DNA from: Octopus sinensis
Lineage: Eukaryota
Assembly (NCBI RefSeq): GCF_006345805.1
Contig: NC_042998.1
Span: 159,774,001-159,838,000 of the forward strand
Direction: 5' to 3'
Length of the DNA stretch: 64,000 nt
A program made the position numbers and the translations under genes. Of the stretch, positions 5,666-30,865 are shown piece by piece (the first letter of the stretch is position 1; each line of letters begins with the position of its first letter). Below the pieces are notes generated by a model. That model was not told where the DNA came from. It saw only the letters and a list, made by a program, of their open reading frames with translations, and did not search any database.

Positions 5666-5840
5666 GTTTAAATATTTGTTGTGCAAGATTTTTTATGTGA
5701 AGTCGTGTGTTGAAACAGATATTGTTATATTTCGGAATGGTCATATTGCCAGTTTAGCCAATAAAAACACACGCACTATATATTTGGTGTTATTTTGCTT
5801 CAGTGATATTTATTTTTTACATTAATCTTAATCTTATTTC

Positions 5841-5884
5841 GGCCAAAGTTCTTTCGTCACACTCCTGTGACGCATCAGTGGTCC
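5841..5884 (-). ncRNA. Candidate non-canonical minimal type I hammerhead ribozyme (PLE tail, left arm)
   Basis: Sense strand reads GGACCA-CUGAUGC-GUCAC-AGGAGU-GUGAC-GAAA-G-AA-C-UU-UGGCC: perfect 5-bp stem II, 2-bp stem III, and core position 9 is C instead of A. Confidence 0.5.
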
Positions 5885-6391
5885 TTTGTTTTCTTCTCAC
5901 TTACTTGTGTCTCTCCTTACTAACCGTCAGCCATTTTGTATTTCTATTGTATGTCTTCATTTGCGCATGCTTATATCTCTATGTGCGTCTATGTTTATTT
6001 AGTGTGTGTGTGGGGGGGGATGCCTGTAATATTTGTATCTTCTGGTTATATACATTCTTGTAATTTGTATTTTGTTTTTGTTGTTGTTGCTTTTGTTCTA
6101 ATTTTGTTCATGTGTTTACATCCACCCATTATTATCATTACATATGCTTGTATGTATGTATAACAACAATATTAGTAATAATAATAATAAATCTAATCGA
6201 AAAAAAAAAAAAATACATATACATATATATATATACATACATATACATATACATATATATATATATACATATATACACACATATATACACATATACATAT
6301 ACATATATATACACATATACATATATATAGATATTCATTTCTATTTCTTTAATTACCTGTGTATTTATTATGTTTGCAGGATCCACTATTG

Positions 6392-7280: not shown

Positions 7281-7322
7281 AGGTTTTGCATAGTATGAAT
7301 GAAGGATTTGGGTTTTATTTTT

Positions 7323-8023
7323 ATCAGAGTATACAAAGGAGCCATGAAGAAATTTGATAATATATTATGTAATGATAGGAATGGGATTTGCCCACTCTAT
7401 AGGAACAAGTCATGGAACACTATAGAAAGGACAAAAAAGAAAATAGGGAAGGCCAACTCTTGGTATGATAGCCATAAATACCAGAGTGTCATGTTCGTTG
7501 ACACCACCCCTGGAGGTGAACTAGCGTACCGCTTTAGAAGGACCCTAGATAAACTTAAACTAAGAATTAAGGTTGTTGAAAAGCCAGGCAACCCTATCAG
7601 ATCTATAATGGTAGAAGCTATCCTTTTAGTAGAACTCTCTGTACGGATAACTATTGCACTGTATGTAGATTTAGCCCACAAACGAACTGTAAAGCCAGAA
7701 ATGTGGTCTATAGTATAAGATGTATAGAGGGACGATGCAGTAACAAGACAGTAACATACGTAGGGGAAACTGCAAGAAGCATTGGTGAGCGGGTGAATGA
7801 ACATTGGAGACAACTCAAGGAAGGTAAAAGCTCATCGATTCTGTACCAACACGCCGAACAAGAACACGGGGGATCAATCAATAACATAGAGATTAAGATA
7901 TTGTCCACACATAGAACAGATGCAACAATTAGACAAATTACAGAAGCTACACATATAATAGAAAATAAACCTAGCCTGAATAGAAAACTAGAATGGAGCA
8001 ATAGCGCACACCACAACATATGA
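7323..8023 (+). pseudogene. Inverted duplicate of the PLE C-terminal coding region
   Basis: SVMFVDTTPGGELA...IKVVEKPG and the same GIY-YIG ORF as the left arm. Confidence 0.85.
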
Positions 8024-8533
8024 CAATAGTGGATCCTGCAAACATAATAAATACACAGGTAATTAAAGAAATAGAAATGAATATCTATATATATGTATAT
8101 GTGTATATATATGTATATGTATATGTGTATATATGTGTGTATATATGTATATATATGTATATGTATATGTATGTATATATATATATGTATACGTATTTTA
8201 TTTTTTATTTTTTATTTTTCGATTAGATTTATTATTATTATTACTAATATTGTTGTTATACATACATACAAGCATATGTAATGATAATAATGGGTGGATG
8301 TAAACACATGAACAAAATTAGAACAAAAGCAACAACAACAAAAACAAAATACAAATTACAAGAATGTATATAACCAGAAGATACAAATATTACAGGCATC
8401 CCCCCCACACACACACTAAATAAACATAGACGCACATAGAGATATAAGCATGCGCAAATGAAGACATACAATAGAAATACAAAATGGCTGACGGTTAGTA
8501 AGGAGAGACACAAGTAAGTGAGAAGAAAACAAA

Positions 8534-8578
8534 GGACCACTGATGCGGTCACAGGAGTGTGACGAAAGAACTTTGGCC
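8534..8578 (+). ncRNA. Same hammerhead-like motif in the right arm, with one extra G
   Basis: GGACCACTGATGCGGTCACAGGAGTGTGACGAAAGAACTTTGGCC. Confidence 0.45.
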
Positions 8579-8692
8579 GAAATAAGATTAAGATTAATGT
8601 AAAAAATAAATATCACTGAAGCAAAATAACACCAAATATATAGTGCGTGTGTTTTTATTGGCTAAACTGGCAATATGACCATTCCGAAATAT

Positions 8693-8734
<42 letters not shown>

Positions 8735-8821: not shown

Positions 8822-9981
8822 CTATACATACAGTACCACCAGCCCTCTTCCTGTCACCAGCCCTCACCTGTTTCAAAGTAAAGTAATATTTTCTCATGTC
8901 CTTCAGAAATGAACAGCACAATAGCTGGACCATGATTTCATGGAAGACTGCAAATGAACAACACTGCTTTTTACATGACAGTCATGTTTCCTTACAAGCA
9001 GCCCATTGTGAAAGAAAAAAGAGACACAAACACAAACATATACACACATTTGGCTATTGTATTATATATAATAATAATAATAAACCATATACCCATTCTT
9101 TTACCTAATATATGAATGCAAGTTATTTTCTGACTCATAGAATTTTGGACAACAACATATATATATATATAAATATATATATATGTATATATATGTATAT
9201 ATATATATATCTTTGTAATTCATTCTAGAATAAACCAGGAACATAACAATTTCACCAGCTATATAAATCTACAACTCTTCAATCTGTAACTAGTTTGATA
9301 AAAGCCAATGCATGAAACTCTCACCCCTTGAGTCATTCTGTTGCTTCTGCTAAATATTAATAAAAATATACATATACTCATATTTTCAGTTCTATTTTTT
9401 CCTGTTTGCATCACCATGTCTATATATTATATACACACACACACACACACCACACATATAAATATATCATCACCATCATCATCATTGTTTACCATCTGCT
9501 TTCCATGCTAGCATAGGTTGGACGATTTGACTGGCTGCACCAGACTCCAATCTGATTTGGCAGAGTTTCTACAGCTGGATGCCCTTCCTAACACCAACCA
9601 CTCCGAGAGTGTAGTGGGTGCTTTTACGTTCCACCGGCATGAGGGCCAGTCAGGTGGTACTGGCAATGGCCATGCTCAAATGGTGCTTTTTATGTGCCAC
9701 CTGCACAGGAGCCAGTCCAGCGGCATTGGCAACGACCTCGCTCGAATGTTTTTTCACATGCCACCAGTACAAGTGCCAGCAAGGTAACGATCACTCTCAA
9801 ATGGTGCTTTTTACATGCCACCAGCATTGAGGCCAGTTTGTTGCTCTGGCAACAATCATGCTCCACTAGCACAGATGCCAGTTATCGAATTTGATTTCGA
9901 TTTTGAATTCACTTGCCTCAACAGGTCTTCGCAAGCAAAGTTTAGTGTCCAATGAAAGAAAGGTACTCATAAGTGGGCTGG

Positions 9982-13079: not shown

Positions 13080-13166
13080 AAACAAACATTAGCATTCAGT
13101 TCAACCTACATACACTACACTATCATATTTTTGCACTATATGATCACTACCTAACATAGGAGATAA

Positions 13167-13337
13167 CCCTAAGTAGGGGTGGGGATGGCGTAAAGCCTTT
13201 AGAAGTGTTCATGGGAGACAACTAAGGGATGACAAAGGATAGGAACTTCCGGTGCAGTGAGAGGGGGTGGGAGTTCGGGCGCACCGCAAACTAGGAAGTT
13301 TAGACGAGAGCATCTTCTGCTTGCGCTGGTTTATATA
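13167..13337 (-). promoter_or_regulatory. Putative RTE copy 1 promoter motifs: CCCTA-NN-TAGGG, ACCGGAAGTT and TATATAAA
   Basis: Motifs at 13167-13178, 13244-13253 and 13330-13337. The first two are conserved in copy 2. Confidence 0.5.
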
Positions 13338-13990
13338 GGGTGGTGGTGGTGCTAGTGCTAGTGCTGGTACTGGTGCTGATGGTGCTGATGGTGCTGGTGG
13401 TGGTGATGCTGGTGCTGGTGGAGGAAGTCTTGGCGAAGCGAGTGGTAATCGAAAGAGCAAGAGACAGACAGAGTGAGGCTGAGAGAGAGACAGACAGACA
13501 GACAAGGTGAGGCTGAGAGAGACAGATAGACAGAGTGAGCTAGAGAGAGAGAGAGGGGAAGTGGGCAAGAACACAAGGGAGGAAAATATTATTTTGGGAT
13601 CTGCGTAGCATAATTTAACGAGACAGCGAATGTTGATAATAGTAAAATAGAATTAAGAAATCTGAGAGTTTTCGGTCAGACAATCTAAGACAAAATCAGA
13701 GTAATAAGTGACTGTGTGATAAAACTTTAATAGATGAATGGATCAATGAATATGTTGCAGTTAAGGAAATACGTGAACTAAGGTTATCTTAAGGGAATAA
13801 CAAGGAAGACAAAACTATTGAAAATTATATTTACATGATGACATGGTACTGAAATAGACAGGATAATGAAAAGAACTAATAGGGGTTTATGATCTGCGCA
13901 GGAATAGAAGAGTAGATGAAATAAGGTTAGTGGACCCTCTTGTCAGCTTAGCCAATAGCTGTTAGACTATCCGCACACCCAGTATAAGCA

Positions 13991-15570: not shown

Positions 15571-15917
15571 GTGATTATAATAACTGTGTGGAAGCCTATT
15601 TCATATATATGTATATAAATATATATATATATCATCATCATCATCATCGTCGTTTAACGTCCGTTCTCCATGCTAGCATGGGTTGGACGGTTCGACCGGG
15701 GTTCTGGGAAGCCAGAAGGCTGCACCAGGCTCCAGTCTAATTTGGCAATGTTTCTACAGCTGGATGCCCTCCTAACGCCAACCACTCCGTGAGTGTAGTG
15801 GGTGCTTTTTACGTGCCACCTGCACAGGTGCCAGGCGGGGCTGGCAACGGCCACGGTCAGATTGGTATATTTATGTGCCACCGGCACGGAAGCCAGTCGA
15901 GGCGGTGCTGGCATCGG

Positions 15918-16520
15918 CCACGAGTCGGATAGTGCTTTTTACGTACCACCAGACCAGGGATCCTGGCTGGTTCAATTCGATTTCGATTTCGCTTGCCCCA
16001 ACATGTCTTCACAAGCAAAGGGGTTGGCAAGGGTGCCTGTCGTACGGTCGCATTGGAGTATTTTACGTGCCACGGCCACGAGTCGGATAGTGCTTTACGT
16101 ACCACCAGACCAGGGATACTGGCTGGTTCAATTCGATTTCGATTTCGCTTGCCCCAACATGTCTTCACAAGCAAAGGGGGTTGGCAAGGGTGCCTGTCGT
16201 ACGGTCGCATTGGAGTATTTTACGTGCCACGGCCACGAGTCGGATAGTGCTTTACGTACCACCAGACCAGGGATCCTGGCTGGTTCAATTCGATTTCGAT
16301 TTCGCTTGCCCCAACATGTCTTCACAAGCAAGGGGGTTGGCATGGGTGCCTGTCGTACGGTCGCATTGGAGTATTTTACGTGCCACGGACCCGAGTCGGA
16401 TAGTGCTTTTTACGTACCACCAGGCCAGGGATCCTGGCTGGTTCAATTCGGTTTCGATTTCGATTTCGATTTCGCTTGCCCCAACATGTCTTCGCAAGCA
16501 TGGGGGGTTGGGATGGGTGT
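15918..16520. repeat. ~157-bp tandem repeat, about 4 copies, inside the RTE 3' UTR
   Basis: The unit starting CCACGAGTCGGATAGTGC recurs at 15918, 16076, 16233 and 16390. Confidence 0.9.
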
Positions 16521-16610
16521 CTGTCGTCGGATGAGGTTCTATATCGACTTCGCTTGCCTCAACCGGTCTTTGTGTCCAAGGGAGGAAAGGCATTCATAAG
16601 TGGGCTGGGC

Positions 16611-19600
16611 TCACTTGTCCTGCCTGGTCTTCTCACGTACAGAATATTTCCAAAGGTCTCGGTCTCTGGTCATTTCCTCAGTGAGGCCTAAAGTTCGAAG
16701 GTCGTGCTTCACCACCTCGTCCCAGGTTTTCCTGGGTCTACCTCTTCCACGGGTTCCCTCAACTGCTAGGGATTGGCACTTTCTCACACACCTATCTTCA
16801 TCCATTCTCGCCACATGACCATACCAGCGCAATCGTCTCTCTTGCACACCACAACTGATGCTTCTTAGGTACAACATTTCTCTCAAGGTGCTAACGCTCT
16901 GTCGAGTATGTACACTGACATTACACATCCATCGGAGCATACTGGCTTCATTCCTCACGAGCTTACGCATGTCCTCAGCAGTCACAGCCCATGTTTCGCT
17001 GCCATGTAGCATGGCTGTTCGTACACACGCATCATACAGTCTGCCTTTTACTCTGAGCGAGAGGCCTTTAGTCACCAGCAGAGGTAAGAGCTCCCTAAAC
17101 TTTGCCCAGGCTATTCTTATTCTAGCAGTTACACTTTCAGCGCACCCACCCCCACTACTGACTTGGTCACCTAGATAACGGAAGCTATCAACTACTTCTA
17201 GTTTTTCCCCCTGGAAAGTGACGGAAGTTGTTTTCTGCAGATTTTCGGAGGTTAATGCTCCCGAGCATCTGCCACATACAAAAACTATCTTCCCAGTTAG
17301 CCTACCTTTGACATTGCTGCACCTCTTATGTGTCCATAGCTTACACTGGGTACATCTTATAGAGTTTCTACCTACACCTTTTCTACAGATCGAGCAGGGC
17401 CATCTTCCTGAAGATATTTGTGGATTGTCTACCTTTCTACTTATTAGTACTTTGGTTTTAGCTAGGTTGACTCTAAGGCCCCTTGATTCTAAACCCTCCT
17501 TCCACACCTGGAACTTCTCCTCCAGTTCTGATAGTGACTCAGCAATAAGAGCAAGGTCGTCAGCGTAGAGGAGCTCCCAGGGACAGCCTGTCTTGAATTC
17601 CTCCGTAATTGCCTGGAGTACTATGATAAATAGGAGGGGGCTGAGTACTGAACCCTGGTGGACCCCAACCTCTACTTTGAATTCTTCTGTGTACATGTTG
17701 CCAACCCTAACCTTACTTACGGCATCTCTGTACATGGCTTGCACAGTCCTCACCAGCCATTCATCTATCCCTAGTTTCCTCATTGACCACCAGATAAGGG
17801 ATCGGGGGACCCTATCAAAAGCTTTCTCCATGTCAACGAAAGCTAGGTACAGGGGCTTATCTTTGGCTAGGTATTTCTCCTGCAGCTGCCTTACCAGGAA
17901 TATAGCATCAGTGGTACTTTTTCCTGGCACGAACCCAAACTGCATCTCATCTAAACTAACTCTCTCTCTCTATTAGTTGGGCTATGACCCTCTCCGTAAC
18001 CTTCATTACTTGATCCAACAGCTTGATACCTCTGTAATTATTTGTATCTAGGGCATCACCTTTACCTTTGTAGCAGTTGACTAGTATGCTGCTGCACCAG
18101 TCATTGGGTATGACTCCTTCGTGTATCACCTGGTTGACTATACGGGTGACTAGGTTATAGCCGACACTGCCAGATATTTTGAGCATTTCTGCAGTAATTC
18201 CTGATGGGCCTGGGGCTTTCCCTGTCTTCATGCTTCTAATTGCCTTAGCTACCACGGAACTATCAACTCGGATAGCTGGTCCCTCTGTAGGGTCAACATT
18301 CGGCAGACTCTCTTTATCCCATTCATTTTCCTCATTCAGTAACCTTTCATAGTGGCGTCTCCAAGCTTCTCTCTTTGCATCCTCATTTAGCGCAAGTGAA
18401 CCATCCTCCATGCGAACACATTTCTCTCCTACCACATCACGATTCTCTCTCACACTGTCTTGCAACACGAAATACCTCAAGTCTTTCATCCTCACGGCGC
18501 AGGACATTGGCAAATTTTCTCTTATCTGCTTCCCCTCTGGCTAGATAGACCTGTCTCCTAGCTTCCCTTCTGGCAGTCTGATACCCTTCCCTGCTACCAC
18601 CGTTCTTCCAGGCCTTCCAAGCCTGTTTCTTTTGTCTAATAGCCCTGTCAACAATATTGTTCCAGCCACAGATCTGGTCAGCGGCTTTCAGCAGGTTGTC
18701 CCTCAGAAACGTCCAGTTGTCTTCTACCCCATGTGTAGCTATACCCCCTTCCACTTCGTCAAAGGCTTCAAGTAACATATCTCTAAATCTCTGTCCATTC
18801 GCAGGGGCTTTAAGCTTCCAGACCCTTCTTCTCCATGTTGGTCGTCTTCTAGTCGCCCTCTTAGTCCTGATCCTAAAGTCACTAACTACCAGTCTATGTT
18901 GTGGGGTGCATTCTTCGCCTGGGAAGGTTTTGGCATTTTTAAGCAGCCATCTTTCCCTTTTTCTGGCAAGGATGTAGTCGATTTGGCTAGTATGCCGGCC
19001 CGATCGGTAGGTGACCAGGTGGCTTGTTGGTTTCCTGAAGTTAGTGTTGCAGACCATAAGACTATTCGCATCGCAGAACTCCAGCAGCCTGGTTCCCTCC
19101 TCGTTGCGGGAACCATAACCGTAGCCTCCATGTACGCCATGGAAGCCCCCAGCATGTCGTCCAACATGCCCATTGAAATCACCAGCCACAAAGAGAAGGT
19201 CCCTGTCGTTCGTCGATGAGGTGGTCTGCAGTAGGGTGTCATAGAAACTGTCTTTCTGTCCATCGGGTAGCCCTGGCTGAGGGGCATAGGCCGATATAAT
19301 GGTTGCTAATCTATTATGAAGCACTATTCTAATCTTAAGTATTCTGTCACTTACCTGATTACCTCAATTACTCTATCTATCCATTTCTCAGCGATAATTA
19401 TACCCACCACCAACAACCCGTCAGTGTTCTCTGCCCAGAAAATCTTGTACCTGTGTCCCTTGCCTGTGAGGACCCTAGCAGATCCTCCTCTCCACCTTAT
19501 TTCTTGCATACAACATACATCAACACGTCTCCGTTCAAGCATCTCGACTATCTCGCCAGACCTACCTTTCAATGTGCCAACGTTGAGGGTGCCTACCCTG

Positions 19601-19692
19601 AGGGTGTGGGAGGTGTGGGCCTCTGAGACCCTGGGATGAGGGGCCGCAGTGTTCTGTACCTGAAAAGAAAGCTTGCATTTGCCAGATATCAT
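16611..19692 (-). CDS. RTE APE-RT polyprotein; three apparent frameshifts, all in simple repeats
   Basis: ORF pieces 19351-19692, 18437-19324, 17956-18513 and 16611-17945. Motifs LNVGT, AYAPQ, GDFNGHVG, SQIDYIL, PQHRLV, GVHQGSVLSPLLF, YADDL, FRYLG, GRPRKTW. Confidence 0.85.
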
Positions 19693-19756
19693 ACTGAGAC
19701 TCTAGACTACAACCTGCATAAATTTCAAAGTTTTTGCGCTATATGATCACAATAAA

Positions 19757-19845
19757 CCCTACATAGGGGTGCGGGGGGGGGGTCAAGAAAGATAGAAAAC
19801 AGAAACTTCCGGTTCTGGTAGACGGGTGGGAGGGCGGGGTCACCT
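19757..19845 (-). promoter_or_regulatory. Conserved 5' motifs of RTE copy 2: CCCTA-NN-TAGGG, ETS-like ACCGGAAGTT, GC box
   Basis: CCCTACATAGGG at 19757-19768, AACTTCCGGT at 19804-19813, and GGGCGGGG near 19832. Confidence 0.5.
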
Positions 19846-20203
19846 CCAAGGAACAACAGGTTTTAGTTAATACGTAGGGAATTTTCTGCGACAGAAATTA
19901 CTGAACATCTAGAAACTTCGGGGTTCGAGAAGAATGTAATATAAATAAGAGAGAGAAAATATTTCGTAGGGAATTTAGGGTATCTTTGAACAACAGTTTT
20001 AAGTTAATACGTAGGGAATTTTCTGCGACAGAATTACTGAACATCTAGAAACTTCGGGGTTCGAGAAGAATGTAATATAAATAAGAGAGAAGAAAATATT
20101 TCGTAGGGAATTTAGGGTATCTTTGAACAACAGGTTTTAAGTTAATACGTAGGGAATTTTCTCCGACAGAAATTACTGAACATCTAGAAACTTCGGGGTT
20201 CGA

Positions 20204-20631
20204 TTAAAACATAATATAAATAGGAGAGAGGGAGAATATTGTAGTGAATTCTGGGGATGGAATAACAACGGGATGACACTGAAATTAAAGGAGGAATTTA
20301 AAATGCATGACAGACAGGAAGCCATGCATACAAGATGGCGAAACAACTAATAGAGAAACGGGATTTAGGGTTACGAATCAACGCTTAAAAAATGAATATG
20401 AATGACAGGTTGTAAGTTAAATTCGCTTAGCTGGTCATTTTTCGAGTCAGTGTTTTGTCAGCAAGATGTAGAATCGAGAAGAAGGACGAGATAAATCGAA
20501 CACTGCTTTATAAAGGGTTAGGGATTGGGGGGGGATTATCAGGTGGAAGCATGAGGAAGAGAGGGGGGAAGGAAGAGAGAGAGAGAGAGCTAAGGGACAA
20601 CATGTTTAATTCGTAAGGAATTTTCTGCAAC
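20204..20631 (-). promoter_or_regulatory. Array module 1, putative Pol II promoter unit nearest the ORF
   Basis: TTTATAAA at 20507-20514, CAAGATGGCG at 20331-20340, CAGGAAG just before it, and a GA-rich tract. Confidence 0.5.
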
Positions 20632-22471
20632 AGAAATTACTGAACATCTAGAAACTTCGGGGTTCGAGAAGAATGTAATATAATAAGAGAGAGAGAAAAT
20701 ATTTCGTAGGGAATTTAGGGTATCTTTGAACAACAGGTTTTAGTTAATACGTAGGGAATTTTCTGCGACAGAAATTACTGAACATCTAGAAACTTCGGGG
20801 TTCGAGAAGAATGTAATATAAATAAGAGAGAGAGAAAATATTTCGTAGGGAATTTAGGGTATCTTTGAACAACAGGTTTTAAGTTAATACGTAGGGAATT
20901 TTCTGCGACAGAAATTACTGAACATCTAGAAACTTCGGGGTTCGAGAAGAATGTAATATAAATAAGAGAGAGAGAAATATTTCGTAGGGAATTTAGGGTA
21001 TCTTTGAACAACAGGTTTTAAGTTAACGTAGGGAATTTTCTGCGACAGAAATTACTGAACATCTAGAAACTTCGGGGTTCGAAGAATGTAATATAAATAA
21101 GAGAGAGGAAAATATTTCGTAGGGATTTAGGGTATCTTTGAACAACAGGTTTTAAGTTAATACGTAGGGAATTTTCTGCGACAGAAATTACTGAACATCT
21201 AGAACCTTCGGGGTTCGAGAAGAATGTATATAAATAAGAGAGAGAAAATATTTCGTAGGGAATTTAGGGTATCTTTGAACAACAGGTTTTAAGTTAATAC
21301 GTAGGGAATTTTCTGCGACAGAAATTACTGAACATCTAGAAACTTCGGGGTTCGAGAAGAATGTAATATAAATAAGAGAGAGAGAAAATATTTCGTAGGG
21401 AATTTAGGGTATCTTTGAACAACAGGTTTTAAGTTAATACGTAGGGAATTTTCTGCGACAGAAATTACTGAACATCTAGAAACTTCGGGGTTCGAGAAGA
21501 ATGTAATATAAATAAGAGAGAGAGAAAATTTTCGTAGGGAATTTAGGGTATCTTTGAACAACAGGTTTTAAGTTAATACGTAGGGAATTTTCTGCGACAG
21601 AAATTACTGAACATCTAGAAACTTCGGGGTTCGAGAAGAATGTAATATAAATAAGAGAGAGAGAAAATATTTCGTAGGGAATTAGGGTATCTTTGAACAA
21701 CAGGTTTTAAGTTAATACGTAGGGAATTTTCTGCGACAGAAATTACTGAACATCTAGAAACTTCGGGGTTCGAGAAGAATGTAATATAAATAAGAGAGAG
21801 AAAATATTTCGTAGGGAATTTAGGGTATCTTTGAACAACAGGTTTTAAGTTAATACGTAGGGAATTTTCTGCGACAGAAATTACTGAACATCTAGAAACT
21901 TCGGGGTTCGAGAAGAATGTAATATAAATAAGAGAGAGAGAAAATATTTCGTAGGGAATTTAGGGTATCTTTGAACAACAGGTTTTAAGTTAATACGTAG
22001 GGAATTTTCTGCGACAGAAATTACTGAACATCTAGAAACTTCGGGGTTCGAGAAGAATGTAATATAAATAAGAGAGAGAGAAAATATTTCGTAGGGAATT
22101 TAGGGTATCTTTGAACAACAGGTTTTAAGTTAATACGTAGGGAATTTTCTGCGACAGAAATTACTGAACATCTAGAAACTTCGGGGTTCGAGAAGAATGT
22201 AATATAAATAAGAGAGAGAGAAAATATTTCGTAGGGAATTTAGGGTATCTTTGAACAACAGGTTTTAAGTTAATACGTAGGGAATTTTCTGCGACAGAAA
22301 TTACTGAACATCTAGAAACTTCGGGGTTCGAGAAGAATGTAATATAAATAAGAGAGAGAGAAAATATTTCGTAGGGAATTTAGGGTATCTTTGAACAACA
22401 GGTTTTAAGTTAATACGTAGGGAATTTTCTGCGACAGAAATTACTGAACATCTAGAAACTTCGGGGTTCGA

Positions 22472-22901
22472 TTAAAACATAATATAAATAGGAGAGAGGG
22501 AGAATATTGTAGTGAATTCTGGGGATGGAATAACAACGGGATGACACTGAAATTAAAGGAGGAATTTAAAATGCATGACAGACAGGAAGCCATGCATACA
22601 AGATGGCGAAACAAATAATAGAGAAACGGGATTTAGGGTTACGAATCAACGCTTAAAAAATGATATGAATGACAGGTTGTAAGTTAAATTCGCTTAGCTG
22701 GTCATTTTTCGAGTCAGTGTTTTGTCAGCAAGATGTAGAATCGAGAAGAAGGACGAGATAAATCGAACACTGCTTTATAAAGGGTTAGGGATTGGGGGGG
22801 GATTATCAGGTGGAAGCATGAGAAAGAGAGAGGGGGGAGGAAGAGAGAGAGAGAGAGCTAAGGGACAACATGTTTAATTCGTAAGGAATTTTCTCTGCAA
22901 C
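22472..22901 (-). promoter_or_regulatory. Array module 2
   Basis: Near-identical to module 1. TTTATAAA at 22774-22781, CAAGATGGCG at 22599-22608. Confidence 0.5.
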
Positions 22902-25286
22902 AGAAATTACTGAACATCTAGAAACTTCGGGGTTCGAGAAGAATGTAATATAAATAAGAGAGAGAGAAAATATTTCGTAGGGAATTTAGGGTATCTTTGA
23001 ACAACAGGTTTTAAGTTAATACGTAGGGAATTTTCTGCGACAGAAATTACTGAACATCTAGAACTTCGGGGTTCGAGAAGAATGTAATATAAATAAGAGA
23101 GAGAGAAAATATTTCGTAGGGAATTTAGGGTATCTTTGAACAACAGGTTTTAAGTTAATACGTAGGGAATTTTCTGCGACAGAATTACTGAACATCTAGA
23201 AACTTCGGGTTCGAGAAGAATGTAATATAAATAAGAGAGAGAGAAAATATTTCGTAGGGAATTTAGGGTATCTTTGAACAACAGGTTTTAAGTTAATACG
23301 TAGGGAATTTTCTGCGACAGAAATTACTGAACATCTAGAAACTTCGGGGTTCGAGAAGAATGTAATATAAATAAGAGAGAGAGAAAATATTTCGTAGGGA
23401 ATTTAGGGTATCTTTGAACAACAGTTTTAAGTTAATACGTAGGGAATTTTCTGCGACAGAAATTACTGAACATCTAAACCTTCGGGTTCGAGAAGAATGT
23501 AATATAAATAAGAGAGAGAAAATATTTCGTAGGGAATTTAGGGTATCTTTGAACAACAGGTTTTAAGTTAATACGTAGGGAATTTTCTGCGACAGAAATT
23601 ACTGAACATCTAGAAACTTCGGGGTTCGAGAAGAATGTAATATAAATAAGAGAGAGAGAAATATTTCGTAGGGAATTTAGGGTATCTTTGAACAACAGGT
23701 TTTAAGTTAATACGTAGGGAATTTTCTGCGACAGAAATTACTGAACATCTAGAAACTTCGGGGTTCGAGAAGAATGTAATATAAATAAGAGAGAGAGAAA
23801 ATATTTCGTAGGGAATTTAGGGTATCTTTGAACAACAGGTTTTAAGTTAATACGTAGGGAATTTTCTGCGACAGAAATTACTGAACATCTAGAAACTTCG
23901 GGGTTCGAGAAGAATGTAATATAAATAAGAGAGAGAGAAAATATTTCGTAGGGAATTTAGGGTATCTTTGAACAACAGGTTTTAAGTTAATACGTAGGGA
24001 ATTTTCTGCGACAGAAATTACTGAACATCTAGAAACTTCGGGGTTCGAGAAGAATGTAATATAAATAAGAGAGAGAATATTTCGTAGGGATTTAGGGTAT
24101 CTTTGAACAACAGTTTTAAGTTAATACGTAGGGAATTTTCTGCGACAGAAATTACTGAACATCTAGAAACTTCGGGGTTCGAGAAGAATGTATATAAATA
24201 AGAGAGAGAGAAAATATTTCGTAGGGAATTTAGGGTATCTTTGAACAACAGGTTTTAAGTTAATACGTAGGGATTTTCTGCGACAGAAATTACTGAACAT
24301 CTAGAAACTTCGGGGTTCGAGAAGAATGTAATATAAATAAGAGAGAGAGAAAATATTGTAGGGAATTTAGGGTATCTTTGAACAACAGTTTTAAGTAATA
24401 CGTAGGGAATTTTCTGCGACAGAAATTACTGAACATCTAAAACTTCGGGGTTCGAGAAGAATGTAATATAAATAAGAGAGAGAAAATATTTCGTAGGGAT
24501 TTAGGGTATCTTTGAACAACAGGTTTTAAGTTAATACGTAGGGAATTTTCTGCGACAGAAATTACTGAACATCTAGAAACTTCGGGGTTCGAGAAGAATG
24601 TAATATAAATAAGAGAGAGAGAAAATATTTCGTAGGGAATTTAGGGTATCTTTGAACAACAGGTTTTAAGTTAATACGTAGGGAATTTTCTGCGACAGAA
24701 ATTACTGAACATCTAGAAACTTCGGGGTTCGAGAAGAATGTATATAAATAGAGAGAGAGAAATATTTCGTAGGGAATTTAGGGTATCTTTGAACAACAGG
24801 TTTTAAGTTAATACGTAGGAATTTTCTGCGACAGAAATTACTGAACATCTAGAAACTTCGGGGTTCGAGAAGAATGTAATATAATAAGAGAGAGAGAAAA
24901 TATTTCGTAGGGAATTTAGGGTATCTTTGAACAACAGGTTTTAAGTTAATACGTAGGGAATTTTCTGCGACAGAAATTACTGAACATCTAGAAACTTCGG
25001 GGTTCGAGAAGAATGTAATATAAATAAGAGAGAGAGAAAATATTTCGTAGGGAATTTAGGGTATCTTTGAACAACAGGTTTTAAGTTAATACGTAGGGAA
25101 TTTTCTGCGACAGAATTACTGAACATCTAGAAACTTCGGGGTTCGAGAAGAATGTAATATAAATAAGAGAGAGAGAAAATATTTCGTAGGGAATTTAGGG
25201 TATCTTTGAACAACAGGTTTTAAGTTAATACGTAGGGAATTTTCTCCGACAGAAATTACTGAACATCTAGAAACTTCGGGGTTCGA

Positions 25287-25712
25287 TTAAAACATAATAT
25301 AAATAGGAGAGAGGGAGAATATTGTAGTGAATTCTGGGGATGGAATAACAACGGGATGCACTGAAATTAAAGAGGAATTTAAAATGCATGACAGACAGGA
25401 AGCCATGCATACAAGATGGCGAAACAACAATAGAGAAACGGGATTTAGGGTTACGAATCAACGCTTAAAAAATGAATATGAATGACAGGTTGTAAGTTAA
25501 ATTCGCTTAGCTGGTCATTTTTCGAGTCAGTGTTTTGTCAGCAAGATGTAGAATCGAGAAGAGGACGAGATAAATCGAACACTGCTTTATAAAGGGTTAG
25601 GGATTGGGGGGGGATTATCAGGTGGAAGCATGAGGAAAGAGAGAGAGGGGGGAGGAAGAGAGAGAGAGAGAGCTAAGGACAACATGTTAATTCGTAAGGA
25701 ATTTTCTGCAAC
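25287..25712 (-). promoter_or_regulatory. Array module 3
   Basis: TTTATAAA at 25586-25593, CAAGATGGCG at 25412-25421. Confidence 0.5.
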
Positions 25713-27969
25713 AGAAATTACTGAACATCTAGAAACTTCGGGGTTCGAGAAGAATGTAATATAAATAAGAGAGAGAGAAAATTTTCGTAGGGAATTTAGG
25801 GTATCTTTGAACAACAGGTTTTAAGTTAATACGTAGGGAATTTTCTGCGACAGAAATTACTGAACATCTAGAACTTCGGGTTCGAGAAGAATGTAATATA
25901 AATAAAGAGAGAGAAATATTTCGTAGGGAATTTAGGGTATCTTTGAACAACAGGTTTTAAATTAATACGTAGGGAATTTTCTGCGACAGAAATTACTGAA
26001 CATCTAGAAACTTCGGGGTTCGAGAAGAATGTAATATAAATAAGAGAGAGAGAAAATATTTCGTAGGGAATTTAGGGTATCTTTGAACAACAGGTTTTAA
26101 GTTAATACGTAGGGAATTTTCTGCGACAGAAATTACTGAACATCTAGAAACTTCGGGGTTCGAGAAGAATGTAATATAAATAAGAGAGAGAGAAAATATT
26201 TCGTAGGGAATTTAGGGTATCTTTGAACAACAGGTTTTAAGTTAATACGTAGGGAATTTTCTGCGACAGAAATTACTGAACATCTAGAACCTTCGGGGTT
26301 CGAGAAGAATGTAATATAAATAAGAGAGAGAGAAATATTTCGTAGGAATTTAGGGTATCTTTGAACAACAGTTTTAAGTTAATACGTAGGGAATTTTCTG
26401 CGACAGAAATTACTGAACATCTAGAAACTTCGGGGTTCGAGAAGAATGTAATATAAATAAGAAGAGAGAAAATATTTCGTAGGGAATTTAGGGTATCTTT
26501 GAACAACAGGTTTTAAGTTAATACGTAGGGAATTTTCTGCGACAGAAATTACTGAACATCTAGAAACTTCGGGGTTCGAGAAGAATGTAATATAAATAAG
26601 AGAGAGAGAAAATATTTCGTAGGGATTTAGGGTATCTTTGAACAACAGGTTTTAAGTTAATACGTAGGGAATTTTCTGCGACAGAAATTACTGAACATCT
26701 AGAAACTTCGGGGTTCGAGAAGAATGTAATATAAATAAGAGAGAGAGAAAATATTTCGTAGGGAATTTAGGGTATCTTTGAACAACAGGTTTTAAGTTAA
26801 TACGTAGGGAATTTTCTGCGACAGAAATTACTGAACATCTAGAAACTTCGGGGTTCGAGAAGAATGTAATATAAATAAGAGAGAGAGAAAATATTTCGTA
26901 GGGAATTTAGGGTATCTTTGAACAACAGGTTTTAAGTTAATACGTAGGGAATTTTCTGCGACAGAAATTACTGAACATCTAGAAACTTCGGGGTTCGAGA
27001 AGAATGTAATATAAATAAGAGAGAGAGAAAATATTTCGTAGGGAATTTAGGGTATCTTTGAACAACAGGTTTTAAGTTAATACGTAGGGAATTTTCTGCG
27101 ACAGAAATTACTGAACATCTAGAAACTTCGGGGTTCGAGAAGAATGTAATATAAATAAGAGAGAGAGAAATATTTCGTAGGGAATTTAGGGTATCTTTGA
27201 ACAACAGGTTTTAAGTTAATACGTAGGGAATTTTCTGCGACAGAAATTACTGAACATCTAGAAACTTCGGGGTTCGAGAAGAATGTAATATATAAGAGAG
27301 AGAGAAAATATTTCGTAGGGAATTTAGGGTATCTTTGAACAACAGTTTTAAGTTAATACGTAGGGAATTTTCTGCGACAGAAATTACTGAACATCTAGAA
27401 ACTTCGGGGTTCGAGAAGAATGTAATATAAATAAGAGAGAGAGAAAATATTTCGTAGGGAATTTAGGGTATCTTTGAACAACAGGTTTTAAGTTAATACG
27501 TAGGGAATTTTCTGCGACAGAAATTACTGAACATCTAGAAACTTCGGGGTTCGAGAAGAATGTAATATAAATAAGAGAGAGAAAATATTTCGTAGGGAAT
27601 TTAGGGTATCTTTGAACAACAGGTTTTAAGTTAATACGTAGGGAATTTTCTGCGACAAATTACTGAACATCTAGAAACTTCGGGGTTCGAGAAGAATGTA
27701 ATATAAATAAGAGAGAGAGAAAATATTTCGTAGGGAATTTAGGGTATCTTTGAACAACAGGTTTTAAGTTAATACGTAGGGAATTTTCTGCGACAGAATT
27801 ACTGAACATCTAGAAACTTCGGGGTTCGAGAAGAATGTAATATAAATAAGAGAGAGAGAAAATATTTCGTAGGGAATTTAGGGTATCTTTGAACAACAGG
27901 TTTTAAGTTAATACGTAGGGAATTTTCTCCGACAGAAATTACTGAACATCTAGAAACTTCGGGGTTCGA

Positions 27970-28398
27970 TTAAAACATAATATAAATAGGAGAGAGGGAG
28001 AATATTGTAGTGAATTCTGGGGATGGAATAACAACGGGATGACACTGAAATTAAAGGAGGAATTTAAAATGCATGACAGACAGGAAGCCATGCATACAAG
28101 ATGGCGAAACAACTAATAGAGAAACGGGATTTGGGTTACGAATCAACGCTTAAAAAATGAATATGAATGACAGGTTGTAAGTTAAATTCGCTTAGCTGGT
28201 CATTTTTCGAGTCAGTGTTTTGTCAGCAAGATGTAGAATCGAGAAGAAGGACGAGATAAATCGAACACTGCTTTATAAAGGGTTAGGGATTGGGGGGGGG
28301 ATTATCATGGAAGCATGAGGAAAGAGAGAGGGGGGAAGGAAGAGAGAGAGAGAGAGCTAAGGGACAACATGTTTAATTCGTAAGGAATTTTCTGCAAC
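27970..28398 (-). promoter_or_regulatory. Array module 4
   Basis: TTTATAAA at 28272-28279, CAAGATGGCG at 28097-28106. Confidence 0.5.
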
Positions 28399-30389
28399 AG
28401 AAATTACTGAACATCTAGAAACTTCGGGGTTCGAGAAGAATGTAATATAAATAAGAGAGAGAAAATATTTCGTAGGGAATTTAGGGTATCTTTGAACAAC
28501 AGGTTTTAAGTTAATACGTAGGGAATTTTCTGCGACAGAAATTACTGAACATCTAGAAACTTCGGGGTTCGAGAAGAATGTAATATAAATAAGAGAGAGA
28601 GAAAATATTTCGTAGGGAATTTAGGGTATCTTTGAACAACAGGTTTTAAGTTAATACGTAGGGAATTTTCTGCGACAGAAATTACTGAACATCTAGAAAC
28701 TTCGGGGTTCGAGAAGAATGTAATATAAATAAGAGAGAGAAAATATTTCGTAGGGAATTTAGGGTATCTTTGAACAACAGGTTTTAAGTTAATACGTAGG
28801 GAATTTTCTGCGACAGAAATTACTGAACATCTAGAAACTTCGGGTTCGAGAAGAATGTAATATAAATAAGAGAGAGAGAAAATATTTCGTAGGGAATTTA
28901 GGGTATCTTTGAACAACAGGTTTTAAGTTAATACGTAGGGAATTTTCTGCGACAGAAATTACTGAACATCTAGAACCTTCGGGGTTCGAGAAGAATGTAA
29001 TATAAATAAGAGAGAGAGAATATTTCGTAGGGAATTTAGGGTATCTTTGAACAACAGGTTTTAAGTTAATACGTAGGGAATTTTCTGCGACAGAAATTAC
29101 TGAACATCTAGAAACTTCGGGGTTCGAGAAGAATGTAATATAAATAAGAGAGAGAGAAAATATTTCGTAGGGAATTTAGGGTATCTTTGAACAACAGGTT
29201 TTAAGTTAATACGTAGGGAATTTTCTGCGACAGAAATTACTGAACATCTAGAAACTTCGGGGTTCGAGAAGAATGTAATATAAATAAGAGAGAGAGAAAA
29301 TATTCGTAGGGAATTTAGGGTATCTTTGAACAACAGGTTTTAAGTTAATACGTAGGGAATTTTCTGCGACAGAAATTACTGAACACTAGAAACTTCGGGT
29401 TCGAGAAGAATGTAATATAAATAAGAGAGAGAGAAAATATTTCGTAGGGAATTTAGGGTATCTTTGAACAACAGGTTTTAAGTTAATACGTAGGGAATTT
29501 TCTGCGACAGAAATTACTGAACATCTAGAAACTTCGGGGTTCGAGAAGAATGTAATATAAATAAGAGAGAGAGAAAATATTTCGTAGGGAATTTAGGTAT
29601 CTTTGAACAACAGGTTTTAAGTTAATACGTAGGGAATTTTCTCTGCGACAGAAATTACTGAACATCTAGAAACTTCGGGGTTCGAGAAGAATGTAATATA
29701 AATAAGAGAGAGAGAAAATATTTCGTAGGGAATTTAGGGTATCTTTGAACAACAGGTTTTAAGTTAATACGTAGGGAATTTTCTGCGACAGAAATTACTG
29801 AACATCTAGAAACTTCGGGGTTCGAGAAGAATGTAATATAAATAAGAGAGAGAGAAAATATTTCGTAGGGAATTTAGGGTATCTTTGAACAACAGGTTTT
29901 AAGTTAATACGTAGGGAATTTTCTGCGACAGAAATTACTGAACATCTAGAAACTTCGGGGTTCGAGAAGAATGTAATATAAATAAGAGAGAGAGAAAATA
30001 TTTCGTAGGGAATTTAGGGTATCTTTGAACAACAGGTTTTAAGTTAATACGTAGGGAATTTTCTGCGACAGAAATTACTGAACATCTAGAAACTTCGGGG
30101 TTCGAGAAGAATGTAATATAAATAAGAGAGAGAGAAAATATTTCGTAGGGAATTTAGGGTATCTTTGAACAACAGGTTTTAAGTTAATACGTAGGGAATT
30201 TTCTGCGACAGAAATTACTGAACATCTAGAACTTCGGGGTTCGAGAAGAATGTAATATAAATAAGAGAGAGAGAAATATTTCGTAGGGAATTTAGGGTAT
30301 CTTTGAACAACAGTTTTAAGTTAATACGTAGGGAATTTTCTGCGACAGAAATTACTGAACATCTAGAAACTTCGGGTTCGAGAAGAATG

Positions 30390-30391
<2 letters not shown>

Positions 30392-30481
<90 letters not shown>

Positions 30482-30505
30482 ATATATATTATTATATATA
30501 TATTA

Positions 30506-30562
<57 letters not shown>
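30392..30562. repeat. (TA)n microsatellite closing the array
   Basis: Directly visible; overlaps the last monomer at AATATA. Confidence 0.95.
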
Positions 30563-30564
<2 letters not shown>

Positions 30565-30865
30565 TAACAATTAAGGAACGGCCATAATAGGCCATTCACC
30601 CACTAGAAATAACAGCCAAAGCTTCTACCGCAAATAAAGATTAATTCCGTAAACAGGAGAAAATTAAAAAAACATTACCCTGTAATTTCTTGTACGGTAT
30701 ACCGTTTCATCCGCGGATGAAACGGTATACCGTACAAGAAATTACAGGGTAAATGTTTTTTTAATTTTCTCCTGTTTACGGAATTAATCTTTATTTGCGG
30801 TAGAAGCTTTGGCTGTTATTTCTAGTGGGTGAATGGCCTATTATGGCCGTTCCTTAATTGTTAAT
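30563..30865. repeat. ~303-bp spacerless palindrome centred on CCG|CGG (30713/30714)
   Basis: Arms of 151 and 152 bp that appear to differ by one A. Confidence 0.95.

What the first reader, a model, noticed from the sequence alone, without database searches (positions are those of the whole stretch)
20204..28398. Four periodic promoter-like modules, spaced 2268, 2815 and 2683 bp apart
Seen: each ~430-bp module starts and ends as a diverged monomer. Each contains the palindromic TTTATAAA followed on the RTE-sense strand by a pyrimidine-rich stretch 25-30 nt later, then CGCCATCTTG and CTTCCTG between two ATGCAT. It also holds TTAGGGTTA and AGGGTTAGGG. Border variants (CTCCGAC before three of four modules, CTGCAAC after all four) show the higher-order unit was duplicated as a block. 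Established: AAGATGGCG is the YY1 consensus, and YY1 positions L1 start sites. The layout recalls rDNA spacer promoters with enhancer repeats. The promoter function itself is inference.
Basis: partly seen in the sequence, partly recalled or inferred. Interest (0 to 1): 0.8.

Follow-up and report, generated by a model that had tools for sequence, protein, structure and literature searches.

The report
Young higher-order satellite repeat, octopus-like genome
The four "promoter-like modules" are four near-identical copies of one diverged segment that recurs inside a very young 140-bp tandem repeat array, which is an ordinary higher-order satellite; nothing tested here shows that it works as a promoter.

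Summary
A 10.55-kb head-to-tail array of a 140-bp monomer (19851-30400) is interrupted four times by a near-identical segment at 20204, 22472, 25287 and 27970. The segment is 417 bp, or 464 bp in monomer register, and the spacings are 2268/2815/2683 as reported.

- **Homogeneity:** monomers differ from their consensus by 0.09% substitutions, and the modules differ from each other by at most 0.8%.
- **Block duplication:** 127A>C marks the 4th monomer after every module, and 100G>C marks the last monomer before three of four modules. The monomer count then drifted (13/17/16/at least 14).
- **Module make-up:** the edges are diverged monomers. The core keeps only faint in-register traces.
- **Motifs:** every "promoter" motif is one ancestral instance copied four times. 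The pyrimidine stretch follows from the array's strand bias. The YY1-like site is about 145 nt downstream of the proposed start and inverted relative to the L1 paradigm.
- **RNA and protein:** no Rfam family, tRNA, RNA structure or ORF homologue was found.
- **Adjacent RTE:** it is 5'-truncated at the junction. Three related RTE copies (window, O. vulgaris, O. bimaculoides) have no monomers or modules upstream.

Best reading: a young higher-order satellite built by unequal exchange. Promoter activity is untested and unsupported.

The parts
19851..30400 (+). Whole tandem array of a 140-bp monomer. It holds 62 full monomers plus partial ones and four modules. GC 35%, plus strand 62% purine, CpG observed/expected 1.38.
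   Evidence: TRF period 140; anchor map; consensus and divergence; composition. No monomer or module copy elsewhere in the window.
19851..20203 (+). Truncated unit 0: 2.5 monomers. It starts at monomer position about 61, directly at the RTE junction. Its last monomer carries 100G>C (CTCCGAC).
20204..20667 (+). Module M1 in monomer register (464 bp); the non-monomer part is 20204-20620. The left ~100 bp is a diverged monomer (78% over the first 50 nt). The core is about 280 bp with faint in-register traces. The right ~80 bp is monomer-like at 95% (CTGCAAC variant).
20668..22471 (+). Monomer block 1: 13 monomers. The 4th (21083-21218) carries marker 127A>C. The last one lacks 100G>C.
22472..22937 (+). 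Module M2. It has three private substitutions.
22938..25286 (+). Monomer block 2: 17 monomers. The 4th (23355-23491) carries 127A>C. The last (25147-25286) carries 100G>C.
25287..25748 (+). Module M3.
25749..27969 (+). Monomer block 3: 16 monomers. The 4th (26164-26303) carries 127A>C. The last (27830-27969) carries 100G>C.
27970..28434 (+). Module M4. It has no substitutions relative to M1. A 1-bp deletion removes TTAGGGTTA.
28435..30400 (+). Monomer block 4: 14 monomers plus a partial one. The 4th (28850-28989) carries 127A>C. The array stops at monomer position ~15, where an (AT)n run begins.
20507..20514 (-). TTTATAAA (TATAAAG on the minus strand). Copies at 22774, 25586 and 28272. It is followed on the minus strand by CCTTCTTCTC (10/10 pyrimidines). 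GGGTTAGGGATTGGGGGGGG and a (GA)n tract lie just upstream in the minus sense.
20332..20340 (+). AAGATGGCG (YY1-like consensus) on the plus strand. Copies at 22600, 25413 and 28098. It lies about 145 nt from the proposed minus-strand start and is inverted relative to it.
16606..19850 (-). RTE-type LINE copy 2 (endonuclease + reverse transcriptase + PHD, with about 3 frame breaks). It keeps only about 155 nt of its 5' UTR, so it is 5'-truncated where it meets the array. It is neighbouring sequence, not part of the repeat.
30392..30564 (.). (AT)n microsatellite that ends the array on the right.

Best explanation
This is a young, locally amplified satellite DNA with a higher-order repeat (HOR) structure, in a transposon-rich stretch of an octopod-like genome.

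The basic unit is a 140-bp monomer. The higher-order unit is one 464-bp divergent segment (the "module") followed by a run of monomers. The module is most likely either about three old, strongly diverged monomers plus ~45 bp of G-run and GA-run expansion, or the longer progenitor from which the 140-bp monomer arose by internal deletion.

The array grew by unequal exchange or replication slippage at two levels:
1. Whole higher-order units were duplicated as blocks, which gave four modules with identical position-specific markers.
2. Identical monomers within each unit were gained and lost, which gave 13, 17, 16 and at least 14 monomers per unit.

The modules are carried along by this process. 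Their TATA-like, pyrimidine-rich, YY1-like, ETS-like and telomere-like strings are one ancestral sequence copied four times. The neighbouring RTE is an unrelated, 5'-truncated LINE copy.

- **Shown:** the anatomy, the block duplication, the homogeneity, the absence of known RNA or protein genes, and the non-association with other RTE copies.
- **Inferred:** the amplification mechanism, and the claim that the motifs have no dedicated promoter role.
For: - Regular 140-bp head-to-tail array with four 97-99% identical modules.
- 62 monomers differ from their consensus by 8 substitutions (0.09%). There are 88 indel columns, almost all 1-2-bp deletions, which look like long-read consensus errors.
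- Modules differ by 0-4 substitutions per 500 columns.
- Fixed-register markers: 127A>C in the 4th monomer after all four modules; 100G>C in the last monomer before M1, M3 and M4; CTGCAAC after all four.
- The module's left and right edges are significantly monomer-like (z = 11.5 and 35.8). The core has only a weak in-register trace (22-nt match, z about 5; nhmmer rank 1 of 501 but 1.4 bits).
- CpG observed/expected is 1.5 in the monomer and 0.89 in the module, against 0.35 in the rest of the window. This fits a very young sequence.
- No Rfam hit at the gathering threshold in the whole window, and only a chance hit (E = 1.1) at E <= 10 across one full unit. No tRNA.
- RNA folds no better than shuffles. 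No inverted repeats in the module.
- No protein homologue for any module or monomer reading frame.
- RTE 5' UTR homology runs to ~19845 and stops at the array. Window copy 1, O. vulgaris L004 and O. bimaculoides L003 have no monomer or module upstream.
Against: - The motif layout on the minus strand does look like a Pol II core promoter: (GA)n tract, a C-rich strand opposite a G-quadruplex-prone stretch, TATAAAG, and a 10/10 pyrimidine run ~27 nt later. None of 50 other TATAAA sites in the window has such a run.
- The module's CpG retention (95th percentile of the window) could also mean protection from germline methylation, as at promoters.
- Both array ends are abrupt, with fully homogeneous monomers up to the edge. 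That is less typical of slow in-place growth and could point to insertion of a pre-formed array.
- Genome-wide copy number and distribution could not be examined. All exact-DNA scans of the available collections were empty, and those collections do not hold octopod genomes.
- Unit lengths may be affected by assembly error. The window contains two near-perfect palindromes that could be long-read artefacts.
Confidence: 0.62

Rival explanations
1. Each module is an RNA polymerase II promoter firing on the minus (RTE-sense) strand about 27 nt past TTTATAAA. The 140-bp monomers act as spacer or enhancer repeats, as in rDNA spacers or mouse L1 monomers. Transcripts run through the monomers and, from M1, into the promoter-less RTE copy.
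For: - TATAAAG followed by a 10/10 pyrimidine run at +27 to +37, a combination not seen at 50 other TATAAA sites in the window.
- A (GA)n tract and GGGTTAGGGATTGGGGGGGG just upstream in the minus sense.
- Exact YY1-like and ETS-like cores.
- High CpG observed/expected.
- The array directly abuts, in the same sense, a 5'-truncated RTE that lacks most of its own 5' UTR.
- Mouse L1 shows that tandem monomers can be LINE promoters (PMC9022269, PMC6454616).
Against: - The four modules are one sequence copied, so n = 1.
- The pyrimidine run is expected about 1 time in 4 given the strand bias.
- No A-containing Inr lies at the right distance.
- The YY1-like site is inverted and about 145 nt downstream of the proposed start. 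An equally plausible plus-strand layout exists: TTTAAAA at 20296, then AAGATGGCG at 20332.
- The monomers lack the YY1-like site but each carries TATAAATA on the other strand.
- There is no homology between the module and any RTE 5' region.
- The three other RTE copies examined, from the window and two other genomes, lack the array.
- No rRNA gene is present.
- The array holds about 75 monomers over 10.5 kb, far more than known LINE monomer arrays.
Confidence: 0.15
2. The module plus its monomer run is a mobile or extrachromosomally amplified unit. It would be a non-autonomous element with an internal tandem repeat (like the tandem-repeat-bearing MITE or Helitron-like elements of bivalves), or a rolling-circle or eccDNA product. 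It inserted as a pre-formed array next to the RTE.
For: - Both ends of the array are abrupt and cut within monomers (position ~61 at the left, ~15 at the right). The edge monomers are fully homogeneous.
- Extreme homogeneity.
- High CpG content in a CpG-depleted neighbourhood suggests recent arrival.
- The RTE 5' UTR is cut exactly at the junction.
Against: - The module has no terminal inverted repeats or hairpins.
- No second copy in the other 53 kb of the window or in ~93 kb from three Octopus genomes.
- No remainder of the RTE 5' UTR on the far side of the array.
- No transposase-like or Rep-like ORF.
- Tandem units with register-specific markers are explained equally well by unequal exchange.
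Confidence: 0.1
3. The module holds a small RNA gene with an external promoter (U6-type, polymerase III). TATAAAG at 20512 would drive a transcript of about 100 nt that ends at the T6 run (20392-20387, minus strand).
For: The TATA-like box and a T6 run are about 100 nt apart on the same strand in all four modules. Small-RNA genes are often tandemly arrayed.
Against: - No Rfam family matches at E <= 10 or at the gathering threshold.
- The ~100-nt candidate folds at -7.7 kcal/mol with z = +0.2 against shuffles.
- No recognisable proximal sequence element could be tested.
Confidence: 0.03
4. The higher-order pattern, or at least the number of units and monomers, is an assembly artefact of a noisy long-read assembly of a simpler repeat.
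For: - The array has 1% indel columns, almost all deletions, against about 0.1% frame-breaking indels in the adjacent RTE.
- The window holds two near-perfect palindromes, 5719-8700 and 30563-30865, of a kind that long-read assemblers can create.
Against: - The markers 127A>C and 100G>C recur in fixed register with the modules. A collapse or expansion would not create that pattern.
- M2 has three private substitutions, so the units are distinct copies.
Confidence: 0.07

Closest known systems
Satellite DNA with higher-order repeat organisation (for example primate alpha-satellite HORs; complex satellites of insects and molluscs)
   Same: - Head-to-tail monomers of near-nucleosomal length (140 bp).
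- Distinguishable monomer variants recur in a fixed order.
- Units are homogenised to more than 99%.
- Growth and length change are explained by unequal exchange.
   Different: - The unit is not a fixed number of moderately diverged monomers. It is one strongly diverged 464-bp segment plus a variable run (13-17) of practically identical monomers.
- Only one 10.5-kb array was seen.
- Genomic abundance, chromosomal location and any centromere link are unknown.
Mouse L1 5'-UTR monomer arrays (A, Tf and Gf monomers with a tether; YY1 activates Tf) (PMC9022269, PMC6454616, PMC11602158)
   Same: - Tandem repeats lie directly upstream of a LINE, in sense orientation, and are joined through a short non-repeated stretch.
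- A YY1 core (GCCAT) is present in the repeated region.
   Different: - The YY1-like site is in the modules only, not in the 140-bp monomers, and is inverted and far from the proposed start.
- The array is ~75 monomers and 10.5 kb, against a handful of ~200-bp monomers in L1.
- Three related RTE copies lack it.
- The RTE copy here is 5'-truncated rather than built with the array.
Xenopus-type rDNA intergenic spacer (spacer promoters alternating with 60/81-bp enhancer repeats) - own knowledge
   Same: The formal layout matches: longer promoter-like modules alternate with blocks of short repeats that share sequence with the module edges. The block lengths vary.
   Different: - No rRNA gene in the 64-kb window.
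- No downstream gene promoter of which the modules would be duplicates.
- A polymerase I context is not indicated.
Macrosatellites with kb-sized units (for example D4Z4) - own knowledge
   Same: Kb-sized units (2.3-2.8 kb) in tandem, each carrying a potentially promoter-like segment.
   Different: The units carry no ORF or gene. Unit length varies through an internal minisatellite-like run.

Membership tests
Higher-order-repeat satellite DNA | Head-to-tail tandem monomers of constant length | tested here: met
   Period 140; 62 full monomers of 134-141 bp. The length spread is due to 1-2-bp deletions.
Higher-order-repeat satellite DNA | Distinguishable variants recur in fixed order, so the larger unit was copied as a block | tested here: met
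   The order is module, then 127A>C in the 4th monomer (4 of 4 units), then 100G>C in the last monomer (3 of 4), with CTGCAAC after each module.
Higher-order-repeat satellite DNA | Higher-order units of constant length | tested here: not met
   Units of 2268, 2815 and 2683 bp, with 13, 17 and 16 monomers. This is a variable-length HOR.
Higher-order-repeat satellite DNA | Many copies or long arrays genome-wide (abundance expected of a satellite) | not testable with these tools
   No octopod genome can be searched by DNA. Exact scans of the metagenome, prokaryote-genome and viral collections found nothing.
LINE 5'-UTR monomer promoter array (mouse L1 type) | The repeats are part of the element, so other copies of the same LINE family carry them at the 5' end | tested here: not met
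   Window copy 1, O. vulgaris L004 (90.5% identical to copy 2) and O. bimaculoides L003 have unrelated sequence upstream. Copy 1 and L003 instead share a long non-repetitive 5' UTR.
LINE 5'-UTR monomer promoter array (mouse L1 type) | Each monomer carries the promoter elements (for example a YY1 site) | tested here: not met
   AAGATGGCG occurs only in the 4 modules and never in the 62 monomers.
LINE 5'-UTR monomer promoter array (mouse L1 type) | Monomers have measurable promoter activity | not testable with these tools
   This needs reporter assays or CAGE.
rDNA spacer promoter / enhancer repeat system | Lies between rRNA genes | tested here: not met
   No Rfam hit of any kind in the 64 kb at the gathering threshold.
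rDNA spacer promoter / enhancer repeat system | Spacer promoters are duplicates of the downstream gene promoter | tested here: not met
   The module has no significant similarity to the RTE 5' region or any other part of the window.
Tandemly arrayed small-RNA genes (snRNA, 5S, SL RNA, tRNA-derived) | Match to a known RNA family, or a stable conserved fold | tested here: not met
   Rfam at gathering and at E <= 10 gave nothing. ARAGORN found 0 genes. Fold z-scores were -1.0, -0.5 and +0.2.
Transposable element with internal tandem repeats (MITE or Helitron-like) | Defined termini (TIRs or a hairpin) and dispersed copies with target-site duplications | tested here: inconclusive
   No inverted repeats in or around the module. 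No other copy in the window or in the five fetched loci (L001-L005, ~93 kb).

The most novel reading that the evidence does not exclude
The array is an incipient tandem-repeat promoter captured by a LINE. The modules are real Pol II promoters kept unmethylated (CpG-rich in a CpG-depleted genome). The monomers boost or space them. Read-through from M1 supplies transcription to an RTE copy that lost its own 5' UTR promoter. This would be an invertebrate, non-L1 parallel to the origin of mouse L1 monomer promoters.
Probability: 0.06. Interest if true: 0.65.

Novelty: new member of a known kind. Interest (0 to 1): 0.25.

Why it matters
As it stands, this is a description of one satellite family with a clear higher-order structure in an octopod-type genome. 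My single full-text search turned up no paper on octopus satellite DNA.

It is a clean example of two-level unequal exchange. Register markers prove block duplication, while the monomer number drifts between units.

It would matter more under two conditions:
- Transcription starts were found in the modules.
- The same repeat turned out to sit at the 5' ends of RTE copies genome-wide.

Octopus RTE elements are reported as transcribed in the brain (PMC9115989), and nothing I found describes their promoters.

The report also warns against reading promoter function from motif strings inside repeats. Here four occurrences are one event, and the strand composition alone creates the "initiator-like" stretch.

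Tried and rejected
1. **Other copies by DNA.** Exact-pattern scans found nothing in metagenome contigs (module and monomer patterns), prokaryote genome contigs or viral contigs. These collections do not hold octopod genomes, so this says nothing about abundance.
2. **Other copies by protein.** Exact look-ups of the window's RTE ORF, a 57-aa module ORF and a 78-aa monomer ORF found nothing on record. A concatenate of all stop-free module and monomer translations found no protein at E <= 1.
3. **Module derived from the RTE promoter.** I saw by eye a resemblance between the module's TATA region and a TATATAAA upstream of RTE copy 1. Local alignment against shuffles found only the CT-repeat match (z = 2.1), and BLAST of the copy-1 5' UTR found nothing in the array. 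Rejected.
4. **Monomer derived from the RTE 5' UTR.** GAACC(C)CGAAGTTTCT resembles GAACCGGAAGTTTCT, but z = 2.2 and p = 0.05. Not significant.
5. **L003 as the orthologous "empty site".** There is no collinearity beyond the RTE. The shared block is RTE 5' UTR, not flank.
6. **Module as exactly three monomers.** The global alignment z-score is driven by the edges. The core signal is weak. I kept this as the likelier of two origins, not as a fact.
7. **Small RNA gene or Pol III unit.** Rejected on Rfam and folding.
8. **tRNA-derived or SINE origin of the GGTTCGAG box.** ARAGORN found nothing.
9. **Literature.** No paper on octopus satellite DNA turned up. A 2026 O. vulgaris repeat annotation does not mention satellites. 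The held supplementary files of the octopus RTE paper (at least one cut when stored) contain no module or monomer string.
10. **Not run.** The bacterial promoter/terminator scan was not used because it is irrelevant to a eukaryote. The representative-protein search was not run because one search already made a hit very unlikely.

Full report
**Context**

The window is eukaryotic and full of microsatellites, SINE-like repeats and LINE fragments. The reverse-transcriptase ORF next to the finding (16611-17945, minus strand) has its best named relatives in Octopus bimaculoides (86%) and O. vulgaris (83%). At the DNA level it is 90.5% identical to an RTE copy on O. vulgaris chromosome OX597818.1 (locus L004). 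The source is therefore an octopod or a close relative. The exact species was not determined.

**Check of the observation**

A 140-bp monomer is repeated head to tail from 19851 to 30400. Four segments interrupt it, at 20204-20620, 22472-22888, 25287-25701 and 27970-28387. They are 97.4-98.8% identical by BLAST. Counting substitutions only, they differ at 0-4 of 500 aligned columns (M1 = M4; M2 has three private changes). The other differences are short indels.

Every motif listed is present once per module, with two exceptions:
- M4 lacks TTAGGGTTA because of a 1-bp deletion.
- Only CTTCCTG, not CGCCATCTTG, lies between the two ATGCAT.

CTCCGAC precedes M1, M3 and M4, and CTGCAAC follows all four.

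**Anatomy of the array**

I cut the array at the recurring TTCGA and obtained 62 full monomers and a 140-bp consensus. The monomers differ from it by only 8 substitutions (0.09%) but by 88 indel columns (1.0%). Almost all of the indels are 1-2-bp deletions in short runs, and none is shared in register. The adjacent RTE has only about three frame breaks in 3.1 kb. I therefore read the deletions as unpolished long-read consensus errors inside the repeat, not as biology.

The substitutions are informative:
- 127A>C occurs in exactly the 4th monomer after each of the four modules.
- One further change (78G>A) is private.

This proves that a larger unit, the module followed by an ordered run of monomers, was copied as a block. 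The number of monomers between the fixed markers then changed: 13, 17 and 16, with at least 14 after M4. Only 2.5 monomers precede M1, so the leftmost unit is cut off.

**What the module is**

In monomer register the module occupies 464 bp, which is three monomers plus about 44 bp.
- Left edge: its first ~50 nt align to monomer positions 8-57 at 78% (z = 11.5 against dinucleotide shuffles).
- Right edge: its last ~80 nt are monomer-like at 95% (z = 35.8).
- Core: the ~280-bp core keeps only faint traces that lie on the same register. These are TGAATGACAGGTTGTAAGTTAA (shift -5, z about 5) and TCGAGAAGAA (shift -6). In an nhmmer test the real core ranks first among 501 sequences, but with only 1.4 bits.

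The likeliest origin is three old, strongly diverged monomers plus G-run and GA-run expansion. An alternative I cannot exclude is that a 464-bp unit is ancestral and the 140-bp monomer is its internal-deletion derivative. The module has no inverted repeats. It has no copy elsewhere in the window or in ~93 kb fetched from three Octopus genomes and one metagenome contig.

**Tests of the promoter reading**

1. *Independence.* The four modules are copies of one sequence, so the motif combination was observed once. AAGATGGCG at 4 against 0.17 expected measures duplication, not selection.
2. *Pyrimidine stretch.* The plus strand of the array is 62% purine, and 68% in the module. In the module, 24% of 12-nt windows have at least 10/12 pyrimidines on the minus strand. 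Against the window at large the TATAAA + pyrimidine-run pair is unusual (0 of 50 other TATAAA sites). Given the local composition it is expected about 1 time in 4.
3. *Initiator.* No A lies 25-35 nt after the TATA-like site, so there is no canonical Inr. The run is at best a one-mismatch TCT-like initiator, a type that normally goes with TATA-less promoters (own knowledge).
4. *YY1.* The L1 YY1 site sits at the very 5' end of the 5'UTR, where it sets the start (PMC11602158), and it reads AAGATGGC on the sense strand (own knowledge). Here AAGATGGCG is on the plus strand. It is therefore inverted with respect to the proposed minus-strand transcript and about 145 nt downstream of it. A plus-strand layout (TTTAAAA at 20296, AAGATGGCG at 20332) would fit the L1 geometry at least as well but points away from the RTE. 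When either strand can be read as a promoter, the reading has little force.
5. *TATA strings.* Each 140-bp monomer carries a perfect TATAAATA on the plus strand (67 TATAAA sites in the array).
6. *CpG.* Observed/expected is 1.5 in the monomer and 0.89 in the module, against 0.35 in the rest of the window. The module lies at about the 95th percentile of 417-bp windows. This fits either extreme youth, which is also indicated by 0.09% divergence, or protection from methylation. Other young repeats in the window share the property: the RTE 3' tandem repeat and the palindrome at 30.6 kb.

The promoter idea is thus not refuted. It rests on one sequence instance and on features that the composition largely explains.

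The window has no Rfam family at the gathering threshold. A permissive scan (E <= 10) of 19700-23000 on both strands gives only a chance hit at E = 1.1. ARAGORN finds no tRNA. The module folds no better than shuffles on either strand (z = -1.0 and -0.5).

I noticed that TATAAAG and a T6 run lie ~100 nt apart on the minus strand, the layout of a U6-type polymerase III gene. The candidate RNA folds at only -7.7 kcal/mol (z = +0.2). No reading frame of the module or monomer has a protein relative.

**Relation to the RTE**

On the minus strand the array lies directly upstream of an RTE-type LINE (endonuclease, reverse transcriptase, PHD finger). I aligned four 5' regions:
- window copy 2;
- window copy 1 (10010 to about 13319);
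- O. vulgaris L004;
- O. bimaculoides L003.

Homology in copy 2 runs to about 19845, five bases from the first monomer base. Copy 1 and L003 continue about 35 nt further. After a variable microsatellite stretch they share another block: 13630-13897 matches L003 9438-9692 at 82%. There is no further collinearity between L003 and the window. That block is therefore RTE 5' UTR, not orthologous flank. It implies a 5' UTR of roughly 550-800 nt, in line with the ~600-nt UTRs reported for octopus RTE-2_OV (PMC9115989).

Copy 2 keeps only ~155 nt of it. It is a 5'-truncated copy fused to the array within a monomer (…CTGTTGTTC|CTTGGAGG…). None of the other three RTE copies has monomers or modules upstream, and the module and monomer share no significant similarity with any RTE 5' sequence. 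No monomers lie beyond the RTE's 3' side, so the RTE did not simply insert into the middle of the array. How the junction arose (insertion at an edge, a deletion, or arrival of a pre-formed array) is open.

**Right end**

The array stops at monomer position ~15, inside its own ATATA, where an (AT)n run starts (30392-30564). A 303-bp near-perfect palindrome follows. Both ends are abrupt and homogeneous up to the last base. This is the main observation that fits simple in-place growth less well.

**Conclusion**

The best-supported explanation is a very young higher-order satellite. A diverged 464-bp segment plus a run of identical 140-bp monomers was amplified as a block by unequal exchange or slippage, and monomer number drifted afterwards (confidence about 0.6).

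| Rival | Confidence |
|---|---|
| Mobile or extrachromosomally amplified composite unit | about 0.1 |
| Assembly artefact affecting the copy numbers | about 0.07 |
| Polymerase III small-RNA gene | about 0.03 |

Membership:
- It meets the defining features of HOR satellites except constant unit length. Abundance cannot be tested here.
- It fails the tested features of LINE monomer promoters: it is absent from related copies, and the monomers lack the site.
- It fails the tested features of rDNA spacers: there is no rRNA gene and no cognate gene promoter.
- It fails the tested features of arrayed small-RNA genes.

It is a new member of a known kind, of modest interest.

**Limits**

No octopod genome could be searched at the DNA level with the available tools. 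All collection scans were empty for that reason. The genome-wide distribution, conservation of the module across species, transcription and methylation all remain untested. They are listed as the decisive next steps.

Noticed in passing
window 13255-13263 (copy 1) and 19803-19811 (copy 2), minus strand; L004 about 24130; L003 about 9800: All four aligned RTE 5' UTRs (two in the window, one each from O. vulgaris and O. bimaculoides) keep the string AC(C/T)GGAAGT, a near-perfect ETS-type site, inside an otherwise variable region. It is a candidate element of the RTE's own internal promoter.
   Followed up: partly
window 13090-13897 (minus strand) and L003 9438-9985: RTE copy 1 has a long 5' UTR shared with an O. 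bimaculoides copy. In the window it is interrupted by expanded microsatellites (13341-13555) and a TATATAAA at ~13336. This shows that copy 2 is 5'-truncated at the array junction.
   Followed up: yes
window 15621-15952 and 9456-9767; L001 11519-11826; L004 16188-16522: A ~330-bp SINE-like block follows the RTE stop codon at a similar distance in at least four loci from two genomes. This suggests that the abundant octopus SINE and this RTE share a 3' region, as SINE/LINE partners do. In copy 2 a 157-bp piece of this region is tandemly repeated 3.5 times (15915-16462).
   Followed up: partly
window 30563-30865: A 303-bp near-perfect palindrome lies right after the array. Its outer arms are 114 nt at 100% and its inner arms 54 nt at 91%, with no spacer. 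It is flanked on both sides by (AT)n. It is either a foldback or MITE-like insertion into the microsatellite or a long-read assembly artefact.
   Followed up: partly
window about 5719-8700: A ~3-kb near-perfect inverted duplication centred near 7208, with arms 98-100% complementary. It includes two ORFs that encode almost the same 138 aa on opposite strands. It is a real foldback structure or an assembly artefact, and it is a reason for caution about assembly quality in this window.
   Followed up: partly
window 19851-30400 compared with the rest: CpG observed/expected is 1.38 in the array (1.5 in the monomer) against 0.35 in the remaining 53 kb. GpC shows the opposite pattern (0.41 against 1.01). 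The background is strongly CpG-depleted, which implies historical germline methylation. The array has escaped this or is too young to show it.
   Followed up: partly
window 20515-20534 and 20560-20590 (and the same places in M2-M4): GGGTTAGGGATTGGGGGGGG is a telomere-like, G-quadruplex-prone stretch. It and a (GA)n tract of about 30 nt lie next to the TATA-like site. They account for most of the ~44 bp by which the module exceeds three monomers.
   Followed up: no
each 140-bp monomer, positions about 120-140 and 1-10: The monomer contains GAAacTTC and TTCgaGAA four bases apart. These are two inverted-dimer heat-shock-element-like units, but not a contiguous three-unit element. CGTAGGGAATTT is repeated twice per monomer, 48 nt apart (read by eye).
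   Followed up: no
L002 (ENA metagenome scaffold) and protein P0035 (MAG labelled Herbaspirillum sp.): The closest full-length relatives of the RTE reverse transcriptase include a metagenome scaffold and a protein filed under a bacterial MAG, both at 74% identity. This is probably animal DNA binned or deposited as microbial.
   Followed up: no
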